Part shown: positions 5,419 to 61,144 of the stretch, one piece after another
Numbering within the stretch: the first letter of the stretch is position 1
How the letters are laid out: the number at the start of each line of letters is the position of its first letter
Source: Trichoplax adhaerens
Lineage: Eukaryota; Animalia; Placozoa
NCBI RefSeq assembly: GCF_000150275.1
Contig: NW_002060943.1
Location: 305,077 to 369,076, forward strand
DNA: 64,000 nucleotides
Direction of reading: 5' to 3'
Translations under genes and position numbers: made by a program
Notes under the pieces: generated by a model
The model's database searches: none
The model's input: the letters and a program-made list of their open reading frames with translations, nothing else
Told to the model about the DNA's origin: nothing

Positions 5419-5468
5419 NNNNNNNNNNNNNNNNNNNNNNNNNNNNNNNNNNNNNNNNNNNNNNNNNN
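5419..5468. other. Assembly gap (50 N)
   Basis: Run of n characters. Confidence 1.
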
Positions 5469-49101: not shown

Positions 49102-49695
49102 ACTGTACAGTTTGTCCCAGTCCATTTTCCCCATAAACTTCGAAAGTAAAAAATTGAAATTTCTGTCGATTTTCAATAAAATACAAGTCAATCGATAGAT
49201 TGTATAACGTAGTTCTGCATATAGTTAATTTCTGTCGATTTTCAACAAGATACAAGTCAATCGATAGATTGTATAACGTAGTTCTGCACATAGTTAATTA
49301 GACTGTATAACGTAGTTCGGTATATAGTTAATTTCTGTCGATTTTCAATAAAATACAAGTCAATCGATAGACTGTATAACGTAGTTCTGCATATAGTTAA
49401 TTTCTGCCGATTTTCAATAAAATACAAGTCAATCGATAGACTGTATAACGTAGTTCTGCATATAGTTAATTTCTGTCGATTTTCAATAAAATACAAGTCA
49501 ATCGATAGATTGTATAACGTAGTTCTGTATATAGTTAATATGTTATACTATAGCAGTTATTGTACCCAGATAAATCGATCAATTGATATTGAGTCAATCG
49601 ATAGATTGACATGTATTTTATTGAAAATGGACAAAAATTTCAATTTTTTGTCGATAAAATTTTTCGGGAAAAAGTTCTGGGACAATTTGTACAGT
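49102..49695. mobile_element. Foldback/MITE-like non-autonomous element with ~95-bp imperfect terminal inverted repeats and internal 69-bp tandem units
   Basis: Left end ACTGTACAGTTTGTCCCAG...AAAAAATTGAAATTTCTGTCGATTTTCAATAAAATACAAGTCAATC matches the reverse complement of about 49598-49695. Internal units at 49160, 49229, 49332, 49401, 49470. No transposase ORF and no clear TSD. Confidence 0.7.
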
Positions 49696-51028
49696 ACTTA
49701 ACCCTCCTGTATACTACAGTATGATCCTTTTCCAAACCGATAAATCAGTACACATTAATGTATACTGAACGCCGGCATTTTGGTACGAAATCCGGTCAAT
49801 TTTTGATACAGTATGTGGAATTGGTGTATATGTCATATATTGGTTCATAGTAAAGCGTTGAACTTCATATTAAAGAATTAGATACCAAAAAGATCACGCT
49901 GTACAGTTGAAGTTATTGTAAAACTAACTACTAACTCTATTCTCTCTTTCTTGTATTGAAAAATGCCGGCTTATGCTCGCCATACTTTGCATATTTTATA
50001 CGCGTAGGGAACATATGAAGGGACAGTAGAGGACATGGTGAAAAATAATTCTGTTCAATGGATTCCAGAAAAGCATGTTGGATTCATACTTTTACTCTTG
50101 TAACTACTCTAAATCAAACGTAAAATACATGCGTATAATCTTAAACCCTACCAACTACTGTTGGTATCTTTAGTCTGGCAACAATTCTCAACGAAGCAAA
50201 GTCACGTCTTATTTGCATTTGGTACATACTTTATTTAAGTCATAGTTAACTAGGATTGCGGACAACGTGCTAATATTACAGAAAGATAATACATATGTAC
50301 ATTACTATTTAATTTGCGACAACTACTGCAGAATGGACGAATTTACTGTAACACACTAAAATCCTACTTTTAGTTATACAAATACTGTACATAGATACAG
50401 CACGCGTGCATTTATACAATTATTTTTCCCATTCACTTGATTGACGATTCAATAAGGAAAAGATCTTATAGACTAGTATGGTACTTTGAAATAACACACA
50501 TATTTTTCTTTTTTGTTTGCTTGGAGCATTAATCAGCATGTGGCAGGCTAAAAGAGTAGTTCAATGGCGCAAGTCCTGTACAGTCCATTATTACTTTATC
50601 TTGTGATTACTTCTACCAGTATGTGATGTATTGTTATGTGTTTCAAAGAAACTTTATGATAATTGAACTATAAAAAATTAAAGAAGCCAATTTTTGGCCA
50701 ATTTCCTTAATTATCAGTGATATACTAATTACGAAGAACGCATTTTATTAAACAATTGCATGACAGGATCCAAACGCCTCAAGGGGCATTAATTCACTGG
50801 AGTAAGCAAATGAGATAACTTTAGGTAATTAGGTAAAAGTATTGATGAGTCTATCGGTAGTGGTTATGTATAATATAACACTATAGTTTGTAGTTATAGT
50901 ATTTATAAATTTCCTTACAGAGCTTTTACGAGCGAAGAGTTATAACTACAATCATAGCTATGAAAATTCTTATGTGTTAATGAGAACAGAGGCGAAAATT
51001 AAATCATCATGCCACAAGTTTCAGGACG

Positions 51029-51042: not shown

Positions 51043-51264
51043 ATAATTAAAAGCAATATATTATAATGCATCCAAGATTTAGATGAAAACAAGTTAAAAG
51101 CTATACTTTCATGAAGGATAGAAATACATACGCAATTATCAAATATTGCCCAGCAGAGTATCGACTACATTAACTTTGGTCAGAGTCGGTAAACCCGGAT
51201 ACTACGCCTGTATTTCAGAAAAAATTATGCTCAAGAATTCCAACGATCACGTAAGCCCAAGTTA

Positions 51265-54255
51265 ATGGCGGACAGACGTCAATTACAAATAATCTTAGGT
51301 AATAAAAATGATGGACAGTACCAAAGCAAACTTCGTGCTAGAGTTTTATTGGAAATGTGGGATAAAAATCCTGAATTAAGACCAGAGGGCCACGTCTATA
51401 CTCATGGTTTTTATCCTCCCCAATTAATAGCGGATCCTGACCCAGATCAGTTACCTGAAAAATGTAAGGTGCTATTTTTATTTACAAAAAATATCTCCAA
51501 TAGTTATTCACCTCGTTTCCGGAATGAAATACTTCAACTGCCTGATATTTCTGATGAAATTGATGATTTGCCTATCAATACGGTCACTATCTTACTTGGA
51601 GCAATCACTTTGATTTCATTAATTTATTGGAATTATTATGGCCACATCAATGCATTCCGTAGCCCTAAATTGCCTATTAGTCTGCATAACGCTTGGATAG
51701 AATGCTGTAGGAAATTGCATCGAATTCCTTCCTATACAATTGACACTCTAACTATAGATAATATTCTTTTAATAAGATCTGTTGAAGAGTTTTCTCGTAA
51801 AAACATAAGGCAAAGATTTTCATTTTTTAATGCGGATGAATTCGGCTCTAGTTCCGAAACTACTTTTTTGGGATATTCATTCGCTGCTCTCAGATATGCA
51901 TGCCATGGCATTGTAGACATAGCGTTAAATCTTCAGCTGGCTATGCACAACCATGATAAAGAGGGGATTATAGCAAATCTTAACCAATTAATTGTAATGG
52001 CTGATCAAGCGTCTAATGCGCTGTCAGAAGTCAAGCTTAATCCCTATGCCGAAATAGCTATAATCCCTTCACATTGGAGCATTCTAGGCCAAGTTGGACC
52101 TATTCCACCAGAGCAGCTATTAAGTCCTAAGAGTAAGAAAACAGTCGAAGTATTAACTGAAGAGAATTTAAATTGGAATACTGCTACAGATGAAAGCTTA
52201 AATAACTTAGCGAATGAGAATAAGTTATACGGGACTACTGCTAGTGGATTATTTGATCCCATTTTTGCCACTTTTGATATAATTATTGATCGATCACATA
52301 CATCGGAACTTGGGAAAATGTTTATTAGTACACAGCGACTATTGCCTAAAGCCTATCTACAATTCTTAGAGGCGTTTAGATCAGATTTTAAGAAAACAGG
52401 TAGCCTTAGACAATACTTAGAAACTTTTGGTGATTCAGAATTAGCAAAGACTTTTAATTTACTCGAGCGCTCCTACCATAGATTTTTGAATATGCATCGT
52501 AGCAAAGCCCTAGGACTTCTATCTTTTGCAACCCAAATGGATAGAAATATGACTGTAGCTAATAGAGAGACAAAGTCTGAAAACGCTTACAAGGAAATTA
52601 GCGCTGATTTAGATGCAGGAATTAACGATCGTCAATTTATAAGCCGATTGTATCCTGCAACTATTCAATCTACTCCTGCAAATCTTAATCAACGTAAAAA
52701 TCTACAATATGTAATGTTATTTATTGGTAGTAAAACCTTTTCATATCGAGAGGGTGACAAAATCGGTGTACTAATACCAAATACTGCTACAAATTATCGC
52801 AGTATATCTCAAAATTTTACATTAAACATACATACTAAAGATCCAGTTGAAAGCCAATGGATACTATTTTTGCGTCAGTATTTTGGAATAGTGGATGGTA
52901 AGCTATCAAAAGAAATATTCATCAAATATGCTGATTTTTCGAATAGCAATATTAAAAGCTCTCCATCAGAAATTCCTCCTAAAGTACCTCGTGTATATAG
53001 CATAGCCTCATTCGATAATGACAACATTAAAATACTTGTTGAACGCATAGATAATGGGGAAGTATCACCAATACTTGCACCTCAAAATAATTTATTTAAT
53101 AAAGATCAAATTGTTAATATTTTTCCTGTTAGTTCTTCATTCCAACTTCCACAAGATACTTCAAAACCAATTGTCATGATTGGTATAGGTTCAGGGGTTG
53201 CTCCATATCAATCATTTATTGATCGTAATAAGAAAATGGATGAAGGTCGCAATATGTTTCTATATTTTGGTTGCAGGACTAAAGAGGGTGCTCCTGATAA
53301 GATCGATTACACAAAACTCTGTCTCTCTGCAGATAATAGGCAAAACTTGAAAGAATCGGAATACATCTACAATGGTCGAATTACTAGTTACTTATCATCA
53401 ACAGAAGGGCAAAATAAATTGCGTGAATTATGTTCTCAAGGTGCATTTATTTACATTTGTGGTCCAACAACTTTGTATAGAGATATGATTACAGTATTGA
53501 AATCGGCTATAGGTATAAAACAACTATTGACAATGTTGACTGATCGTATTAGAATTGAAGTATATAGACCAATATCAAATGATGGTAGACGGAAAATATC
53601 GGTATACGATGTTATCACTCATAATGGAGGATCGAATGGTTCGTGGATGGTTATTGATGACTGTGTCTACGATGTCGGCCAATATATCGATCTTCATCCA
53701 GGGGGCAATGAAATAATAGAATCGGTATTAGGAACCGATGCAACGGCGTTATTTAATCTATTTCCGACTTTACATGGAAAAATGGCACGATCAATCTTAC
53801 AGTTATACTATATTGGTGATGTTGAGAAATTAGGTAACGATTTTGAAAGGTTAGCTTATGACGTGACAAGGAAGCAAAATTCTATTGCTGCATGGTATGG
53901 TGATAATCGTGAAAAGCAATATTTTTTCGTCATGAAAAATTTGGATGCTCATGTTGCGTGTCAACATTATTTTAATGACGTGAAGAAATCCTTAGTTGGA
54001 GATGGTAGAGTTAATAAAGAATTACCCGCTTTACAGGTGATACATGAGTATAATGAATTAGTTCAAGATGAAAAATTTGTATTTCCATATTTGAGAAATA
54101 CTGCAGGCGATCTAGTGACGGAGGACGATGAATGGAAAATTATGCAAACGTTGTATGAATATAAATCGATAGTGAAACAATTAGATATTTTCTATTTAGA
54201 TAGACTAAAACGAGTGTTGGTGAAAGATCTTTGTTGCATTACAAGTGAAAACTAA
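51265..54255 (+). CDS. 996-aa fusion: IDO/PrnB-like heme domain + FNR-type FAD/NAD(P)H oxidoreductase + cytochrome b5 + C-terminal helical region
   Basis: Uninterrupted ORF. IDO-like motifs HGFYP, ASGLFDPIFATFDIII, RLLPKAYLQFL, SLRQYL, FLNMH411RSKA. FNR motifs YREGDKIGVLIPN, PRVYSIAS, FQLPQDTSKPIVMIGIGSGVAPYQSF, LYFGCR, IYICGP, EVY. b5 motifs WMVIDDCVYDV, H811PGG, GTDATALF, H837, YIGDV. AATAAA at 54419-54424. Confidence 0.9.
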   Translation: MADRRQLQIILGNKNDGQYQSKLRARVLLEMWDKNPELRPEGHVYTHGFYPPQLIADPDPDQLPEKCKVLFLFTKNISNSYSPRFRNEILQLPDISDEIDDLPINTVTILLGAITLISLIYWNYYGHINAFRSPKLPISLHNAWIECCRKLHRIPSYTIDTLTIDNILLIRSVEEFSRKNIRQRFSFFNADEFGSSSETTFLGYSFAALRYACHGIVDIALNLQLAMHNHDKEGIIANLNQLIVMADQASNALSEVKLNPYAEIAIIPSHWSILGQVGPIPPEQLLSPKSKKTVEVLTEENLNWNTATDESLNNLANENKLYGTTASGLFDPIFATFDIIIDRSHTSELGKMFISTQRLLPKAYLQFLEAFRSDFKKTGSLRQYLETFGDSELAKTFNLLERSYHRFLNMHRSKALGLLSFATQMDRNMTVANRETKSENAYKEISADLDAGINDRQFISRLYPATIQSTPANLNQRKNLQYVMLFIGSKTFSYREGDKIGVLIPNTATNYRSISQNFTLNIHTKDPVESQWILFLRQYFGIVDGKLSKEIFIKYADFSNSNIKSSPSEIPPKVPRVYSIASFDNDNIKILVERIDNGEVSPILAPQNNLFNKDQIVNIFPVSSSFQLPQDTSKPIVMIGIGSGVAPYQSFIDRNKKMDEGRNMFLYFGCRTKEGAPDKIDYTKLCLSADNRQNLKESEYIYNGRITSYLSSTEGQNKLRELCSQGAFIYICGPTTLYRDMITVLKSAIGIKQLLTMLTDRIRIEVYRPISNDGRRKISVYDVITHNGGSNGSWMVIDDCVYDVGQYIDLHPGGNEIIESVLGTDATALFNLFPTLHGKMARSILQLYYIGDVEKLGNDFERLAYDVTRKQNSIAAWYGDNREKQYFFVMKNLDAHVACQHYFNDVKKSLVGDGRVNKELPALQVIHEYNELVQDEKFVFPYLRNTAGDLVTEDDEWKIMQTLYEYKSIVKQLDIFYLDRLKRVLVKDLCCITSEN

Positions 54256-56644
54256 AGGTTTAGGTATTACTAATCTGTAAGCTACATTAGAAGTTTTGAC
54301 CTTTCTAGAATATGATAACAAATGTATTTAAAAACAGGAAAAGCTGGCAATCTCTTTAACTTGAGGGATTGTAATTGAAATATGCTTCTCCTGGTGATAT
54401 ATTGCTATATAAAACTCAAATAAAATTGTAGTAGTAACAAGTTTATAGTATTTCTTACGTACTGTAAATATTAATATTAATTAACGCTATGTTACTAAAT
54501 ACAGTATAACGTAGTTCTGTATATAAGTAGTTAATATGTTGTACTATAGCACTTATTGTACCCATTCGTAGTATTTAGCTATTAGTGCTAGTTAATACTA
54601 ACGGTAAGCCTGAATATGAGCCATAGCTTTATTACTGCGAATTAGTCTAGGAAATTATATACTCAACGGCTCGTTAAGAGAATAAAGCATACAAGCCGAT
54701 CGAAGGAGTACAGTATACGGAATCGTGTTTAATTGTGGATAGACTACATATCTACTGTATGTAAAGACCATTCCATTAATATTATGGGATAAAGTACGTA
54801 GTTTATCATTGATGTGATTTAAGGCCTGGTTTTTGCTGTGATCGTCACCATATACAGATAATGGTTATAGCTATTGCATTATAGTATTACGTTGGCTATT
54901 AAGGGAATGCTATGAATTACAAGATGTCTATTTTACTGTCTTTTAACAGTACTGTATTAGTTCACTTAATCGCTTAATTTATATGTTTAGGTATTTAACG
55001 CATGAATGTACTAAAAATAGCATTGTCCTAAAAGTATCTTTATTCAGTGGATTGTCAAAGAGAATAAATCGTCAAGAAATTTTACGCAATGCATTTGCCG
55101 TATACTGTATATTGCCAGCCAGTTACCGCTTTTAGTTGATGTTTGTTTTTGTTAACTGTTATTACTACTATTAATGTTGACTAGTTAAGAAATGCTACTA
55201 TGGAATAAGATGGATTGCTAAGAAACAATTTACAGCTTCTTCTTACTGTGTTGCTGCTAAATACTGCAATATACCGTTGCGCACAAATGGCACAACGCTA
55301 TTGACTGCATTCATGGTGGCTCCAGTAGCACATTAAGCAATCACGTTTAATTGATGCTATTGTAGTATGCTTAGCGATGCAAGTACAAGTGCATCGACAA
55401 TTAAAATTGTAAATTAGAATGCTGTAGCTGCGTGTTTGCAGAGCTCAGCTGTGCATTCAATAAGTGTACAAGACTTTACTGTGTTTCGGATTATTTTGAG
55501 ATAACTAGTAAAACAGTAGGAAATCAGGTTAATGAATAAACGTTTCTTGTAGTCAATATCTTGAAAAAAAAAAGGAAGCAGAGGCTTGTAGTATTGCGAT
55601 GATTTTCACAGAGATCTCTAAAAAAAGTAAACCTGGTAAAAGCAAGAAATTTTCTGATATCATTTGGGCAGTGTCCTGTCTCTAAGGGTCTCTAGTGTAG
55701 TAATGAGTGTAAACTTTACTGTAAAGTACAGTCCAGACTACAGATTTTGCGGTATCGTAAAAGATGTTAAATGAGCACATTATCGTAAACCGTCAGTAAA
55801 GCGACGGGAGTTTGCACTAGTATATATATGAAATATGGTATAACATTAAGAAAATATGTTCATCCATTTTGTGATCAGAATATCTATCTACTATATCTGA
55901 AAAGAATACAGTTTATATAACACTGGTTATGTGTATCGCCAGTCAGGCGACTTTTCTTTAGCAAATGTAGCCGTTATTATCCCAAAATGACTACTTAGTA
56001 TGGATCTTCCGCGTCTGTTTTCTAAATCACTGGTACTAATTTAAATAGCTTCCATGATCTTGTATAACTGTTTTTTAACCAGAATTTTGTAACAGATAAT
56101 AAGATTCAATCTCTCAATCCTTAATTGAGAAAATATTGTCAATTCAAAATCGACCGACTGCATACTAAATTTAGTTCTGCCATAACCAAGTGTTTGGCCC
56201 AATATTTTAACGAGATGAGTCTGGAAATGTCTGTCCGTCCGAGAGTGATAGTACCGTAGCATACAGTACTCTACGGCAGTGTACAGTCCTGTACTGTACT
56301 GTACACGTACAGTACAGGGTTAGGGTTAAACCTGGCCTGGTACCGTATTGTACGTACTGTAAATGTCATACAGATTCCTACAAAAATAATAACAGTGTGT
56401 AGTAAATAAACTGACGAAAATTACTCATCGACTGTTATTAACTAAGTGCAGAGAGTACTGAGCTTAAATCTTTTGGATATCGGCATTCCAGATTGCACAT
56501 ACTACTACGAGCTTATCGCTAGGTAGCTACTACCTTTCGATCTGATTCTTTCCTCAATCCTAGATACATGTACAGTGGTACACTGGCGTAGGAATATTAT
56601 ACGATGACTTTGCATAAGCACAACACTGCTCGTCAATAATTATA

Positions 56645-57429: not shown

Positions 57430-60400
57430 TTAATAAATATTTTCGTTATCGTATTTCGCGGCGATACCACGTCTTCCTTCAACAACATTTATAGGAGAAG
57501 AATCATCGTCTGGAGTATCATCGAGTCCTTTCCAAGAGCGATTTGATAAGAATTCACCTGCCGATTAAAAATTGAATATTTCAAGAGATATCAAATAATA
57601 ATGTACCGGTTGCATGTTGGTTGAAATAGAACTGGACAATAAATAATACATAAGTGGCACCAAATTCAGCCTCAACATACCTGCAGATGTATGATGTTGA
57701 ATAACTTGCATGCGATCTCGAGTTACTAAGGATTGTTGCTTATCGTGATTGATATTCTCGTCATCATCTACGAAAATCATACTATATTTTACTATTTAAA
57801 TGGTTTATTTAGCATAGCTATTGTTCAACAACAATAATTTACGATAAATCGATAAGCCTTTTTTATAATAATTGATATAGCAAATGACTACAATATCATA
57901 AAGAAATATAAAGTTATTAAAGTGCTTCAGTTAGTTGCTGTAAAGTAGTTCTCAGAAAACAAATTTATTTACCGCGTAGCGATGTATATTGCATATGTCC
58001 GGTTATAAAAGAATAATCTGGATTTCGATTCTTTCTTTCATCCTATAAAAATGATAGTATTTGTTATTATAGAAACATGTCATTTTGAGAAATAATAATT
58101 ATTTCTGAAAAATTTGTCACTAGCATCTTACAAACAATACAAAGATAATCTTACAGTACAATGTAGGCACACGTCATGAATAAATGCAATGCCTAAATCT
58201 CTATATACGTATGTAGCAAGCATTATTATGAATTTTCGGCTATGTAATACAAATCTTAATCTTAATAGATATGTTACTACAGTTAGAGACTTAAATTATT
58301 TCAATATTTAATTACTAATAATGACTATCAAAAATCTGGTCTAAGTTTAAATATGCTTACATCCACATTGAATTCAAGATTAGATAATCCGCCTAGTAAT
58401 ACAACAAAAAAAACTTTCATTTATTTTTTGTTACTTTCAAGGAGCAATTACCTTCAGATAATCCTACGTTACCTGGTAATAATTGCCTAAAGTCTGTTAT
58501 ATAAGTACCGTCCCATTCTCTTTCCCTTAGAATATTTAAAATTTAAATAAAGTTAACAACTGAAATTATAAAATATATAATTGATTAACACCGACATATT
58601 GATAATCGATCGCCAAAAAGGGAAAAACGTAATTATGTTCAAATAAGATTTAATTATTTCTACTTTAAACAGGCGATTTCCAGTTCGTAAGGTGTAAGAA
58701 TGGGCTTATAAAATTCCTAAGTAAAATTACAAGAGTAGCTATTGAGCGCAAGGATACAACAGGAAAAGGATATACTGTAGCAATAACAAATGGAATTCCT
58801 TACCTTAGAATCCAGCAGGGTATTTTCGGGGCAGGCTACTAATACAAAGACATCTATTTCCATGAAATTTGCTAATTTAGCAACATTAATTTTTCCCACC
58901 GAAAAGGTGTATGTCTATACAATTACAGTCATGAACACAACATTACGTATTGTATACGTAGAAGATTAATAGGATTATGCGCAGATAATAGCTTCAAATT
59001 AAAAAACTGTTCTAATATTGTACCTTCTTGTTAGCTGCTTTCAAAACTGCTTTTAGCCTGTCTAGCGTCTGCAAATAATCGGCTAAGGTGTTACCGGTAA
59101 AACATTAGTACAGCACGAAAATATTGATAAAATTTAAGGCGACTAATCGATTAATGTCCAGACCTACGCCTAACGTTCCAATAACTATTCCAACTACTAG
59201 GGCCTCTTTTGCTTTCTGAATTAAATAATATCTGCATGAGAAATAAGATCACTTTTTAATTAACTGAGAACATTATCATGCTGTAACGTTGCAATATTAT
59301 CAAATATAATATATTTTGATGTTATGGTCACACCTTTTCATCAGGGCTTTGTTGACCGATAATGATTCTGATCTACTACTATCCAAATCAGGATTGTAAG
59401 AATAAAACTAATCGATAATAAGATAGATAAAGAGTAGTCATAATTTACTCGTGAAATGAAATATCAACAATGTCAGTAAACTGTTTACCCGACACTTATT
59501 GTATGACATCATAAGATTTGTTAGAGTCAACCCTTCAGAGCCAATATAGAATATAACATAATCATGTATCTCTTTTCCTTCATGTAAGTGAAAAATACGA
59601 CCATACTCTTCTTGATCGCAGCTTTGATTTTCTTTATCTTCTAATAGTTTTGCTGAAGATTCAACAATTGCACTTAATTTTCCTACCTTTATTTCAGAAG
59701 CAATTAAATTTGGATATTGGGCATGTAATGTTTCATATACGGCATCTAAAATATCATATTATAACTCGATTAGTATTAGTTATCACAGATGTTGTGCATC
59801 TATTTATTAAAAGTACCAACAATCCAAATTACTCGCCTATTGTATGGTAATAGACGACATCATATAGAAGGATAGCGTAGCAGTTACGATCGCTTACAAC
59901 GGCTGACAAACTCTCCTTGCATTTATTGGCATCAACAGGATGACGTCCAAACACGTATAAAACAGGCAACCTACGATTACTAAAAGAAGAATAATTTCAT
60001 TTTTTTGGCATAATTCTTACTACTTTGCGAGCTAACTCTTTGTATCTTATTCTACGTATTCTATTCCATGTTGTTGCTATTTAAGAAAGTTCAATACGAT
60101 GCTACTACAGTATTATCATGTAATGATCAATAGCATACTTACGGGCTCAAACAAGCAGAGCCAAAGTGTATTAAACAGTCAGCGTTACCATGGGATGCAG
60201 CAATTTCGTCTACACAACAACTATAGATATATAATATGAATTAAAACGTAAGTATATTGGCACCTACATTAAAAATTGTATCGTATGATGTATTGTGTAT
60301 GTTTATGATGACGACCGAAGTAATCGTAATTTCACGAAAATAAGTACGTCCATTAGCCAAATAATTGAGTAATTACTCAATTATTTTATCCTGGCTTAGA

Positions 60401-61144
60401 CAGTAAAGTATCATTACTTTAACGATTATAATAGATGATTGCTTGTTTGACCTGCCATAAGAAGTATCCGCCAAAATGAAGACATCTATAGATTGAGGAG
60501 ATATAGTTTGTATTTCTAACGCAAGACTTGCTGAATCGGGTAGAAGGCTATCAGGAAACTGTAGAGCAATCTAATACAGTTGATTAAGTATACAGTAATA
60601 TGCATTAAACCGATTTCAATGATGTCCGGCATTAGCCATGTTAGATTAGCATGTATTGATTACTACATCTCTGTCGGTGAAGTTGCTGTCCTATTTTCTT
60701 TCATATTGCCAAGAAAATACCGTACGAGTAAGCGTCATAACAAGACTGTATTTGCGTAGACTTGATGCATTTACAATACTGTCTACACATAATAATACTG
60801 GCATCAAAGTTTGATACTTTGTGAGCTATTTTGATATGCCAACTGGTATTGCTAAGTTAAATTTGATCTCAAATGCAACAACATAACTACATGCTAATCC
60901 ATCAGTTGGAATTGTGCATGCATTGATTGCATTCATTGAAATAACGTACTTTCAAGGCTATAGAGTAGATTCTTACCCTTTTATACCCATGGCTCGTTAT
61001 GAATTGTACAATTCGATCGAGGCTGTAGTATGATTGCAATTCATTTCGATCTTTCTGTGCATAACTATCTATTTGTAATCGTTGAGCAATAACTTCGCTA
61101 CCATCATTACTGAGATTATATTTATCCAGCTGTGGAGTTGCCAT
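57430..61144 (-). CDS. DPH2: Diphthamide biosynthesis protein 2
   Basis: Spliced exons give [112 protein letters not shown]. One GC-AG intron (59836-59746). Confidence 0.95.

What the first reader, a model, noticed from the sequence alone, without database searches (positions are those of the whole stretch)
51265..54255. 3-kb intronless CDS amid intron-dense genes: candidate horizontal acquisition
Seen: neighbours have 14-27 short exons, yet this CDS runs 2991 bp uninterrupted. It is contiguous with host sequence and has AATAAA about 165 nt after the stop. From memory (unverified), IDO-like/FNR/b5 architectures occur in bacteria and fungi rather than animals. Inference: a domesticated gene from a microbe or virus; retroposition is the alternative.
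Basis: inference. Interest (0 to 1): 0.8.

Follow-up and report, generated by a model that had tools for sequence, protein, structure and literature searches.

The report
Bacteria-derived IDO-reductase fusion in Trichoplax
A placozoan (Trichoplax-like) genome carries an intact, intron-free 3-kb gene for a haem dioxygenase-like enzyme fused to its own reductase and cytochrome b5; every detectable relative outside placozoans is bacterial, so it was most likely acquired from bacteria and then kept and duplicated.

Summary
Window 51265-54255 (+) is one 996-codon ORF; the next-longest open frame in 64 kb is 168 aa. A diphthamide-synthase gene 4.4 kb downstream is split into at least 7 exons. The genome looks like Trichoplax.

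The protein has four modules: an IDO-fold haem domain with the proximal His conserved, a CPR/FNR-type FAD/NAD(P)H reductase, cytochrome b5, and a helical tail. A second intronless paralogue (63% identity) lies on another scaffold between ordinary animal genes. dN/dS between the two is about 0.25.

An exhaustive search of 1.84 billion representatives with the IDO-like domain found six relatives. Five sit on bacterial-looking contigs; the sixth is on a short metagenome contig that also looks bacterial. A bacterial protein aligns colinearly over residues 85-989 (E=1e-45). The family occurs in 36 or more bacterial species genomes of at least 8 phyla. None was found in viral contigs, and no other eukaryote appeared.

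Trees place the placozoan pair on a very long branch beside an uncultured gammaproteobacterium's copy (UFBoot 89 / SH-aLRT 97). An AU test does not reject placement outside all bacterial members (p=0.09), so the donor is unresolved.

Best reading: ancient bacterial HGT of a self-sufficient IDO-like oxygenase (about 0.7). The substrate is unknown. The scan noted this same stretch once before (s1-762645).

The parts
51265..54255 (+). Intronless CDS, 996 aa plus stop (copy A of two placozoan paralogues)
   Evidence: paralogue at G000:C1412:2652949-2655936, 63% identical
51352..52644 (+). IDO-fold haem domain (aa about 30-460)
   Evidence: AF2 model pLDDT 77, pTM 0.81; Foldseek top hits IDO1, prob 1.00, TM 0.73-0.77 normalised to IDO1; family profile vs IDO1 E=8e-38; Pfam IDO 3.4e-4, below cut-off, for this sequence alone
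52078..52236 (+). Placozoan-specific insertion in the IDO-like domain (aa 272-324), predicted disordered
   Evidence: absent from all bacterial members; pLDDT below 50; dN/dS 0.52 vs 0.23 for the domain
52495..52497 (+). His411 codon, the putative proximal haem ligand (motif HRxK)
   Evidence: invariant in 43 sequences and 27 full-length sequences; by ungapped spacing it falls at IDO1 His346, 7 residues after the last aligned column (position inferred)
52675..53580 (+). CPR/FNR-type FAD/NAD(P)H reductase module (aa 471-772), shorter than in bacteria
   Evidence: NAD_binding_1; RVYS at 576, GSGVAP at 642, YICG at 730; Foldseek hits to sulfite reductase flavoprotein, CPR, P450 BM3 FAD domain and FNR; PDB sequence hits
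53587..53838 (+). Cytochrome b5 domain (aa 775-858) with HPGG (His811) and second His837
   Evidence: Pfam 8e-16; motifs; PDB b5 hits
53839..54252 (+). C-terminal helical domain (aa 859-996), no Pfam family; carries Asn872 and His896, which match the Asn and His invariant in the bacterial tail alignment
   Evidence: helices 859-877, 886-912, 921-932, 956-990; colinear with the bacterial tail in BLASTP; hhalign E=9e-4, prob 23%; invariant residues
54419..54424 (+). AATAAA, candidate poly(A) signal 164 nt after the stop
   Evidence: function not tested
58666..60558 (-). Context: neighbouring diphthamide-synthesis (DPH1/2-like) gene in at least 7 short exons

Best explanation
The ORF is a functional host gene of bacterial origin. 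It encodes a 'self-sufficient' IDO-superfamily haem oxygenase. In the proposed mechanism, NAD(P)H reduces FAD in the CPR/FNR-type module, electrons pass one at a time to the fused cytochrome b5 haem, and from there to the His-ligated haem of the IDO-fold domain. This keeps or returns that haem in the ferrous state needed to bind O2 and oxidise an aromatic (probably indole-type) substrate. A conserved helical tail completes the protein. The whole four-part gene was taken up from a bacterium by an ancestor of the Trichoplax lineage. It then took on host composition, stayed intron-free, duplicated onto a second scaffold, lost part of the reductase's connecting subdomain and gained a disordered insert. 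Shown: the ORF, the domains, the cofactor motifs, the fold, the bacterial relatives, purifying selection and host integration. Inferred: the direction and age of transfer, the order of electron flow, the catalytic activity and the substrate.
For: Architecture and homology: BLASTP to bacterial P0002 is colinear over aa 85-989 vs 63-1011, E=1e-45; to the cyanobacterial P0007, 3e-34. P0002, P0004 and P0007 carry Pfam IDO+FAD_binding_1+NAD_binding_1+Cyt-b5.

Relatives: exhaustive phmmer of aa 1-470 against 1.84 billion representatives gave 6 hits and no canonical animal IDO. Five of the six contigs have bacterial gene content and packing; the sixth cluster lies on short JGI contigs that also look bacterial.

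Spread in bacteria: 36 loci in Actinomycetota, Myxococcota, Chloroflexota/Thermomicrobiota, Cyanobacteriota, Bdellovibrionota, Pseudomonadota, Bacteroidota and Armatimonadota. Fused, two-domain and split forms all occur. The nearest Atlas clusters are b5+IDO+NAD_binding_1; taxa are recorded for only one of them (Bacteria 100%, phylum known for 4 members).

Phylogeny: the placozoan pair is sister to P0002/L008 at UFBoot 89 / SH-aLRT 97 and 99 SH-aLRT on the full length. P0002's host is an uncultured gammaproteobacterium (PNPase 88% to a MAG).

Host integration and age: no gaps, host GC3, a split DPH gene 4.4 kb away, and paralogue B is a single-exon model between Kringle/EGF/ZP, RPL1 and EGF/laminin-G genes in an independent assembly.

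Function retained: dN/dS 0.25 overall and 0.19-0.30 in each of the four modules. Every family-invariant residue is present, including His411, RxYS, GxGxxP, CG and HPGG. IDO fold confirmed.

Mechanistic precedent: cytochrome b5 with a reductase, or CPR with or without b5, supports IDO1 reduction (Maghzal 2008, Vottero 2006, Pearson 2010, as cited in PMC13142367).
Against: Identity to any bacterial member is only 20-26%, and the placozoan branch is 4-5 substitutions per site, so long-branch attraction could create the P0002 pairing. The AU test does not reject the placozoan genes lying outside all bacterial members (p=0.0945). The stand-alone IDO outgroup attached without support. Absence from other eukaryotes rests on a single-sequence search with a very divergent query, and records close to this genome are withheld from the libraries, so other placozoans could not be examined. 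The FNR and b5 modules taken alone are only slightly closer to the bacterial fusions (47 and 51 bits) than to PDB reductases and b5s (43 and 41 bits). The tail homology is weak (hhalign prob 23%). The equivalent of IDO1 Arg231 (the Trp carboxylate binder) is Pro in the family alignment, and no kynurenine-pathway genes neighbour the bacterial homologues, so Trp 2,3-dioxygenation is not established. No expression data were available.
Confidence: 0.7

Rival explanations
1. Ancient vertically inherited eukaryotic gene: the fusion existed in an early eukaryote or early animal, survived only in placozoans and was lost everywhere else. Bacteria either share it by still older descent or received it from eukaryotes.
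For: The AU test does not reject placement outside all bacterial members. The branch is extremely long. Cytochrome b5 domains are more typical of eukaryotes (general knowledge). Composition is fully host-like.
Against: No eukaryotic homologue appeared in the exhaustive search, the word-index searches or the Atlas. The family spans at least 8 bacterial phyla with fused, two-domain and split forms. Both copies have no introns in a genome whose neighbours are densely split. This reading needs many independent losses.
Confidence: 0.13
2. Retrogene: a processed copy of an intron-containing host gene (host IDO fused or shuffled with host reductase and b5), with the parent since lost.
For: Intronless with an AATAAA downstream. 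Two dispersed copies on different scaffolds. Nucleotide homology between the copies is limited to the CDS plus 40 nt upstream, which fits an RNA-mediated second copy but does not require one.
Against: No intron-bearing relative anywhere in the genome: the only full-length matches are the two uninterrupted copies, and the other hits are unrelated b5 exons. No PF01231 match elsewhere (a weak test). No A-run of 8 or more within 1.2 kb after the stop. The colinear four-part match to bacterial proteins would be left unexplained.
Confidence: 0.04
3. Viral origin or viral vector: acquired from a giant virus or other virus of the placozoan or its prey.
For: Giant viruses carry IDO-fold proteins: a Harvfovirus 768-aa protein (E=6e-9, TMq 0.65, rmsd 3.9) and a Catovirus IDO.
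Against: Pattern scans of 2.9 million viral contigs with the placozoan profile and with the bacterial profile found no relative. The viral hits lack the FNR-b5-tail architecture, judging by length and name. No viral hit in the exhaustive sequence search. No mobile-element hallmarks of matching age around the gene.
Confidence: 0.05
4. Bacterial contamination or chimeric misassembly.
For: Bacterial-type architecture and no introns.
Against: Contiguous sequence without gaps for about 45 kb. It lies inside a scaffold of at least 7.6 Mb and 4.4 kb from a split eukaryotic gene. GC3 is 26%, like the host. The paralogue is present with 1 nt difference in 3285 in an independent assembly of another strain, between animal genes. 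Only 20-26% identity to any bacterium.
Confidence: 0.02

Closest known systems
Uncharacterised bacterial IDO-FAD/NAD(P)H reductase-cytochrome b5 fusion proteins (e.g. Cylindrospermopsis raciborskii WP_303860205.1 / WP_324139919.1, 'cytochrome b5 domain-containing protein'; P0002 from an uncultured gammaproteobacterium)
   Same: Same order of four modules, colinear alignment over about 900 residues, and all family-invariant residues shared, including the putative haem-ligand His, RxYS, GxGxxP, CG, HPGG and the tail Asn.
   Different: Only 20-26% identity. The placozoan reductase is about 80-130 residues shorter (Pfam FAD_binding_1 not detected). There is a 50-residue disordered insert in the IDO domain. 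The gene sits in an animal nuclear genome with host codon usage. I found no paper describing the bacterial family.
Indoleamine 2,3-dioxygenase (IDO1/IDO2; Pfam PF01231; histidine-ligated haem-dependent aromatic oxygenase superfamily)
   Same: Whole two-subdomain fold (TM 0.73-0.77 normalised to IDO1). The family profile hits IDO1/IDO2 at about 1e-37. A His sits at the position of the proximal ligand.
   Different: 13-16% identity in the listed hits. The window sequence alone is below Pfam's cut-off. The IDO1 Arg231 equivalent is not conserved. It is fused to its own redox chain, whereas IDO1 relies on separate b5 and reductases. No kynurenine-pathway context in the bacteria.
Self-sufficient redox fusions: P450 BM3 (CYP102A1), flavohaemoglobin, NOS, assimilatory nitrate reductase, NCB5OR (b5 + b5 reductase)
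   Same: A haem or catalytic domain covalently joined to an NAD(P)H-flavin reductase (plus b5 in nitrate reductase and NCB5OR). The FNR module is structurally CPR/SiR/BM3-like.
   Different: The catalytic domain has the IDO fold rather than a P450, globin or NOS oxygenase fold. There is no FMN/flavodoxin domain; b5 takes the one-electron shuttle position. There is an extra helical tail.
Previously proposed bacterial LGTs in T. adhaerens (Driscoll et al. 2013, PMC3641634: BPL_N, DapF, MurA, RsmE, PhrB, GNAT, MhpC)
   Same: Bacterial-type genes on large eukaryote-like scaffolds of the same genome.
   Different: This gene is not in that list: a text search for cytochrome b5, sulfite reductase and dioxygenase found nothing. 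It is far more diverged, and its nearest sampled relative is not rickettsial.

Membership tests
Bacterial IDO-FNR-b5-tail fusion family | Colinear four-module architecture | tested here: met
   BLASTP colinear over 85-989 vs 63-1011, E=1e-45; domain probes; Pfam on the bacterial members
Bacterial IDO-FNR-b5-tail fusion family | Family-invariant residues present | tested here: met
   35 invariant columns across 27 full-length sequences, the window protein included
Bacterial IDO-FNR-b5-tail fusion family | Homologous C-terminal helical domain | tested here: inconclusive
   hhalign E=9e-4 but prob 23%; phmmer hits only P0002, at 12 bits; the Asn and His invariant in the bacterial tail alignment are matched by Asn872 and His896
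IDO (PF01231) / HDAO superfamily | Sequence match above Pfam's gathering score | tested here: not met
   20 bits against a cut-off of 26 for aa 1-470, and no hit for the whole protein. However, the profile of the fusion family, with this protein in it, hits IDO1 at 8e-38
IDO (PF01231) / HDAO superfamily | IDO two-subdomain all-helical fold | tested here: met
   Foldseek prob 1.00, TMt 0.73-0.77, 435-448 aligned columns
IDO (PF01231) / HDAO superfamily | Proximal haem-ligand histidine | tested here: met
   His411 is invariant; ungapped spacing places it at IDO1 His346 (inferred from spacing, not from coordinates)
IDO (PF01231) / HDAO superfamily | L-Trp-binding residues and Trp to N-formylkynurenine activity | tested here: inconclusive
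   The IDO1 Arg231 column is Pro in the family; alignment there is uncertain; the activity cannot be tested with these tools
Cytochrome b5 (PF00173) | Domain match and two axial His (HPGG plus a second His) | tested here: met
   58 bits against a cut-off of 23.7; HPGG at 811 and His837
CPR/SiR-type FNR module | NAD_binding_1 match with RxYS, GxGxxP and CG motifs | tested here: met
CPR/SiR-type FNR module | Full FAD_binding_1 (PF00667) with connecting subdomain | tested here: not met
   No PF00667 hit in either placozoan copy, while the bacterial members have it. The module is about 300 aa against 380-440
Horizontally acquired gene in an animal | Physically integrated among host genes | tested here: met
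Horizontally acquired gene in an animal | Nearest relatives are prokaryotic; absent from other eukaryotes | tested here: met
   The absence rests on a single-sequence search, so it is provisional
Horizontally acquired gene in an animal | Phylogenetic nesting inside the donor group | tested here: inconclusive
   Sister to L008 at 89/97; AU p=0.0945 for the outside placement
Horizontally acquired gene in an animal | Transcribed and functional | not testable with these tools
   Indirect only: dN/dS 0.25, intact motifs
Retrogene | Intron-containing parent; poly(A) remnant or target-site duplication | tested here: not met
   The flanking 64-nt direct repeats are too young to belong to the insertion

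The most novel reading that the evidence does not exclude
Placozoans domesticated a bacterial enzyme class that has not been described: a naturally self-sufficient IDO-superfamily oxygenase with a built-in NAD(P)H-FAD-b5 electron chain. In an animal where no canonical IDO was detected, the two copies would make an indole or aromatic-derived metabolite (a signal, a defence compound or a detoxification product) that no other animal makes this way. The natural fusion would also be independent evolutionary evidence that cytochrome b5 plus a flavin reductase is the cognate reductant of IDO-type haem enzymes, which is still debated for IDO1.
Probability: 0.4. Interest if true: 0.75.

Novelty: new variant of a known kind. 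Interest (0 to 1): 0.6.

Why it matters
Well-supported, functional bacterium-to-animal transfers of large multi-domain enzymes are rare. Here an entire four-module redox machine appears to have been captured, kept under selection and duplicated in one of the simplest animals. The public name for the paralogue is 'Cytochrome b5 isoform A', and its precomputed Pfam domains do not include IDO. The bacterial family itself seems unstudied. As a natural fusion of an IDO-type haem domain with b5 and a reductase, it offers a tractable single-polypeptide system for studying how IDO-type haems are kept ferrous, and a possible self-sufficient biocatalyst. For placozoan biology it points to a lineage-specific metabolite pathway.

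Tried and rejected
1. Word-index protein searches with the whole protein and with a six-sequence profile found only the placozoan paralogue and unrelated sulfite-reductase flavoproteins. They missed the known bacterial members, so these blanks mean little.

2. The search for related loci with an alignment that included the placozoan sequences had no stretch conserved enough. The bacterial-only alignment worked.

3. A six-frame search of the own genome with PF01231 found nothing, but the control genomes did not ring either, so absence of a canonical IDO is not shown.

4. Rooting with a stand-alone cyanobacterial IDO failed: support 19/0 and a 4.9 branch. The AU test was not significant.

5. Two viral scans and two metagenome scans found no relatives. 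These rest on one or two short peptide patterns each, so sensitivity is limited.

6. Conserved-neighbour analysis of 40 bacterial loci found no kynurenine-pathway genes. It found a PAS hybrid histidine kinase in 8 loci (mostly myxobacterial), CBS-domain proteins, PAS-LuxR regulators and biosynthetic genes. This gives no clear substrate.

7. Pfam on 18 neighbouring open frames was almost blank. The IRF-2BP1_2 hit at 49294-49698 lies in a 69-bp tandem array and is an artefact.

8. The 64-nt direct repeats bracketing the gene were considered as an insertion footprint and rejected. They are 84-95% identical, far younger than a gene whose paralogues have dS of about 1.

9. The first Atlas call failed because the machine was busy.

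10. The relatives of P0002's host lack the gene at the syntenic rpsO-pnp site, so no extra close sequences could be added to break the long branch.
Full report
OBSERVATION

Window 51265-54255 (+) is a single ATG-to-TAA ORF of 996 codons. The stop-free frame is 1020 codons, and the next-longest open frame anywhere in the 64-kb window has 168 codons. AATAAA lies 164 nt after the stop. GC content (34.6%) equals the window's (35.2%), and GC3 is 25.6%. The only N run in the window is at 5419-5468, about 46 kb away.

The window is G000:C1414:305077-369076 in a 105.6-Mb assembly of 1414 contigs. The one full-length database hit is named Trichoplax sp. H2 / T. adhaerens, so I take the genome to be a Trichoplax-like placozoan.

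The contrast with split neighbours is real. A six-frame family search finds a diphthamide-synthesis (PF01866) gene on the minus strand at window about 58666-60558. Its matches run colinearly through profile positions 1-32, 33-60, 61-108, 108-174, 189-219, 240-276 and 276-293 in separate short pieces. I searched that gene exon by exon only and built no joined model.

WHAT THE PROTEIN IS

Pfam finds cytochrome b5 (aa 783-853, 8e-16) and NAD_binding_1 (638-740, 1.6e-5). NCBIfam and PDB sequence hits place the reductase with the CPR / sulfite-reductase / P450 BM3 / NOS type of FNR module. The motifs RVYS (576), GSGVAP (642), YICG (730), HPGG (811) and a second His (837) are present.

The N-terminal 470 residues, taken alone, give only a sub-threshold IDO hit (3.4e-4, 20 bits, cut-off 26). 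An AlphaFold2 model built on a 43-sequence family alignment (pLDDT 77, pTM 0.81) matches IDO1 structures over 435-448 columns with probability 1.00 and TM 0.73-0.77 normalised to IDO1. The family profile hits IDO1 and IDO2 sequences at about 1e-37. Human IDO1 appears here only as PDB entries in tool output. I met no contig that I took for human.

His411 (motif HRxK) is invariant in all 43 sequences. By ungapped spacing it falls at the proximal ligand His346 of IDO1 (inferred from spacing). The column of IDO1 Arg231, which binds the Trp carboxylate, is Pro in this family, so the substrate should not be assumed to be L-Trp.

Residues 859-996 form a helical domain with no Pfam match. The full-length model has pLDDT 78 and pTM 0.79. 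Its reductase part matches SiR-FP, CPR, the BM3 FAD domain and plant-type FNR.

COPIES IN THE GENOME

The genome has exactly two full-length matches, both uninterrupted: this one (copy A), and one on C1412:2652949-2655936 (copy B) at 63% identity. The remaining hits are single b5 exons of other genes.

Copy B equals P0001, a 1094-aa protein. In the independent Trichoplax sp. H2 assembly it is a single-exon gene model lying between a Kringle/EGF/ZP gene, ribosomal protein L1 and a large EGF/laminin-G/Ig gene. Its CDS differs by 1 nt in 3285 between the two assemblies.

Between copies A and B, dN=0.24 and dS is about 1.0, giving dN/dS 0.25. Each of the four modules gives 0.19-0.30, and the placozoan-specific insert gives 0.52. 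Both copies have therefore been under purifying selection since an old duplication.

RELATIVES ELSEWHERE

An exhaustive phmmer search of 1.84 billion cluster representatives with aa 1-470 gave only six hits at E<=1e-3, the best at 1.1e-10, and no canonical animal IDO. The paralogue did not appear, so records near this genome seem to be withheld. For that reason other placozoans could not be assessed.

Three hits (P0002, P0004, P0007) have Pfam IDO + FAD_binding_1 + NAD_binding_1 + Cyt-b5. Two have IDO + b5, and one has IDO alone. P0007's cluster is from Cylindrospermopsis and Dolichospermum.

The contigs of P0002-P0005 and P0007 have bacterial gene content and packing. Examples are rpsO-pnp; Peptidase_M23/CtpB; PAS-LuxR regulators; an NRPS-like/ATP-grasp/methyltransferase cluster; and, in the cyanobacterium, APS kinase / second IDO / amidohydrolase / ABC transporter / sulfotransferase / PhyH. 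The sixth hit's cluster lies on short JGI metagenome contigs that also look bacterial.

BLASTP of the window protein against P0002 is one colinear alignment from aa 85 to 989 (E=1e-45, 22% identity). It runs through all four modules, including the tail. The alignment to P0007 gives 3e-34.

A pattern scan of one genome per species (185,579 species) with the bacterial IDO-domain alignment returned 36 loci. They come from Actinomycetota, Myxococcota, Chloroflexota/Thermomicrobiota, Cyanobacteriota, Bdellovibrionota, Pseudomonadota, Bacteroidota and Armatimonadota. This is a lower bound, because a single peptide pattern was used.

About 29 of the sequences analysed have the full four-part form, and about 10 (mostly actinomycete) have IDO-b5 only. 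In one metagenome contig the IDO gene is followed by a separate reductase gene.

The tail is the weakest link: hhalign gives E=9e-4 with probability 23%. It is colinear, however, and the Asn and His that are invariant in the bacterial tail alignment are matched by Asn872 and His896.

The nearest ESM Atlas clusters are all b5+IDO+NAD_binding_1. Taxa are recorded for one of them only (Bacteria 100%, phylum known for 4 members).

PHYLOGENY

On the full-length alignment (quick search) the placozoan pair sits on a 3.9-substitution branch next to P0002, with SH-aLRT 99.

On the IDO domain (careful search, LG+C20+F+G4 PMSF, 44 rows x 399 columns) the pair is sister to L008 (=P0002) at UFBoot 89 / SH-aLRT 97, on a 5.2 branch. 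The stand-alone IDO outgroup attaches elsewhere without support.

Forcing the placozoan pair next to the outgroup, that is outside every bacterial family member, costs 17.5 log-likelihood units but is not rejected (AU p=0.0945). Nesting is therefore favoured but not demonstrated, and long-branch effects cannot be excluded.

P0002's host is an uncultured gammaproteobacterium with a contig GC of 41.5%. Its PNPase is 88% identical to that of a 'Gammaproteobacteria bacterium' MAG and about 72% to Thioalkalivibrio and Methylococcaceae. It is thus not the rickettsial symbiont of Trichoplax. Two relatives of that bacterium lack the gene at the syntenic rpsO-pnp-CBU_0592 site, so the gene is patchy among bacteria too.

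INTERPRETATION

The whole four-part arrangement is shared with a family that is widespread though sparse in bacteria and was not found in any other eukaryote. Both placozoan copies lack introns in an intron-dense genome, and no spliced parent exists. Transfer from a bacterium into the placozoan lineage is therefore the most economical account (about 0.7).

The transfer must be old. Composition is fully host-like; some of the bacterial homologues, including the nearest, are also AT-rich, so composition alone says little about the source. The paralogues have dS of about 1, and identity to any bacterium is only 20-26%.

Since acquisition the placozoan genes shortened the reductase (no PF00667 match; about 300 aa against 380-440) and gained a disordered 50-residue insert.

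Vertical descent with massive loss (about 0.13), a viral source (about 0.05), retroposition (about 0.04) and contamination (about 0.02) are the rivals.

MECHANISM (INFERRED)

IDO-type haem must be ferrous to bind O2, and it auto-oxidises. For IDO1, cytochrome b5 with a reductase, or CPR with or without b5, has been reported to support activity (Maghzal 2008, Vottero 2006, Pearson 2010, cited in PMC13142367). That same paper notes that the in vivo relevance remains unclear.

The fusion contains exactly this chain in one polypeptide, with all cofactor motifs conserved. The likely flow is NAD(P)H to FAD to b5 haem to IDO-domain haem.

Related His-ligated haem oxygenases (PrnB, MarE, SfmD, TyrH) act in natural-product pathways (PMC11791213). 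Several bacterial homologues here sit in biosynthetic-looking clusters or next to PAS sensor kinases and regulators. None sits beside kynurenine-pathway genes. An aromatic, probably indole-type substrate is my best guess, but this is not shown.

NOVELTY

I found no paper on this fusion or on its presence in placozoans. The 2013 survey of bacterial genes in T. adhaerens lists 12 LGT candidates, and a text search for cytochrome b5, sulfite reductase and dioxygenase in it found nothing (PMC3641634). The public name of the paralogue is 'Cytochrome b5 isoform A', and its precomputed Pfam domains do not include IDO. The scan's own notes hold one earlier first-reader note on this same stretch, calling it a self-sufficient IDO/PrnB-like fusion (s1-762645). 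My results agree with that reading of the architecture.

LIMITS

There are no expression data and no read-level data. Other placozoan genomes could not be reached, and only one exhaustive search was allowed. Residue equivalences to IDO1 come from sequence alignment and spacing, not from model coordinates.

Noticed in passing
window 49148-49649 and 54501-54564: A 69-bp tandem array (6 units, 49158-49609) is bounded by 55-nt inverted repeats (49148-49202 / 49595-49649, 91% complementary), which looks MITE-like. One 64-nt unit recurs 250 nt after the ORF's stop (84-95% identity), so direct repeats about 4995 bp apart bracket the gene. A genome-wide DNA search found this sequence only at these two places. 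It is too well preserved to date from the gene's arrival, and its meaning is unknown.
   Followed up: partly
window 49294-49698: The 135-aa open frame with a weak IRF-2BP1_2 zinc-finger hit (E=0.0023) lies entirely inside the 69-bp tandem array and is most likely a repeat artefact, not an exon.
   Followed up: partly
window about 58666-60558 (-): A diphthamide-synthesis (DPH1/2-like, PF01866) gene in at least 7 short exons. A second, better-scoring copy lies at G000:C1403:369470-371066.
   Followed up: partly
window 51225-51264 vs L051:10246-10285: Nucleotide homology between the paralogues starts 40 nt upstream of copy A's ATG and corresponds to about codon 82 of copy B. Copy B's 98-aa N-terminal extension is therefore partly traceable in copy A's leader. 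Copy A's frame is open back to 51193.
   Followed up: no
L012:95-12637 (cyanobacterial contig, Cylindrospermopsis-type): The bacterial homologue sits in an apparent biosynthetic cluster: APS kinase, the IDO-FNR-b5 fusion, a stand-alone 375-aa IDO, an unknown 369-aa protein, an amidohydrolase, an ABC exporter, a sulfotransferase, a PhyH dioxygenase and GT90. This suggests a sulfated indole-derived product.
   Followed up: no
L024:4011-5885 and 7 other loci, mostly myxobacterial (L015, L017, L030, L032, L034, L040, L047): A PAS-HisKA-HATPase-receiver hybrid histidine kinase lies immediately upstream of the fusion gene in 8 loci. PAS-LuxR (GerE) regulators flank P0003 and P0004. This may link the enzyme to signalling or redox sensing.
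   Followed up: partly
L013:209-3315: A split version of the family: an IDO-only gene (559 aa) directly followed by a separate gene with NAD_binding_1. This supports a functional coupling of the modules.
   Followed up: partly
BFVD A0A3G5A0E3 (Harvfovirus) and A0A1V0SAS2 (Catovirus): Giant-virus proteins with an IDO-like fold. One, annotated as tryptophan-tRNA ligase (768 aa), aligns to the model over 425 columns (E=6e-9, rmsd 3.9) and may be an IDO-TrpRS fusion.
   Followed up: no
L008 vs L052/L053: In P0002's gammaproteobacterial host the fusion gene sits right after rpsO-pnp-CBU_0592. Two related genomes have ffh, or a FitA/PIN toxin-antitoxin pair, at that spot instead. The site is variable and the gene is patchily distributed among bacteria.
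   Followed up: partly
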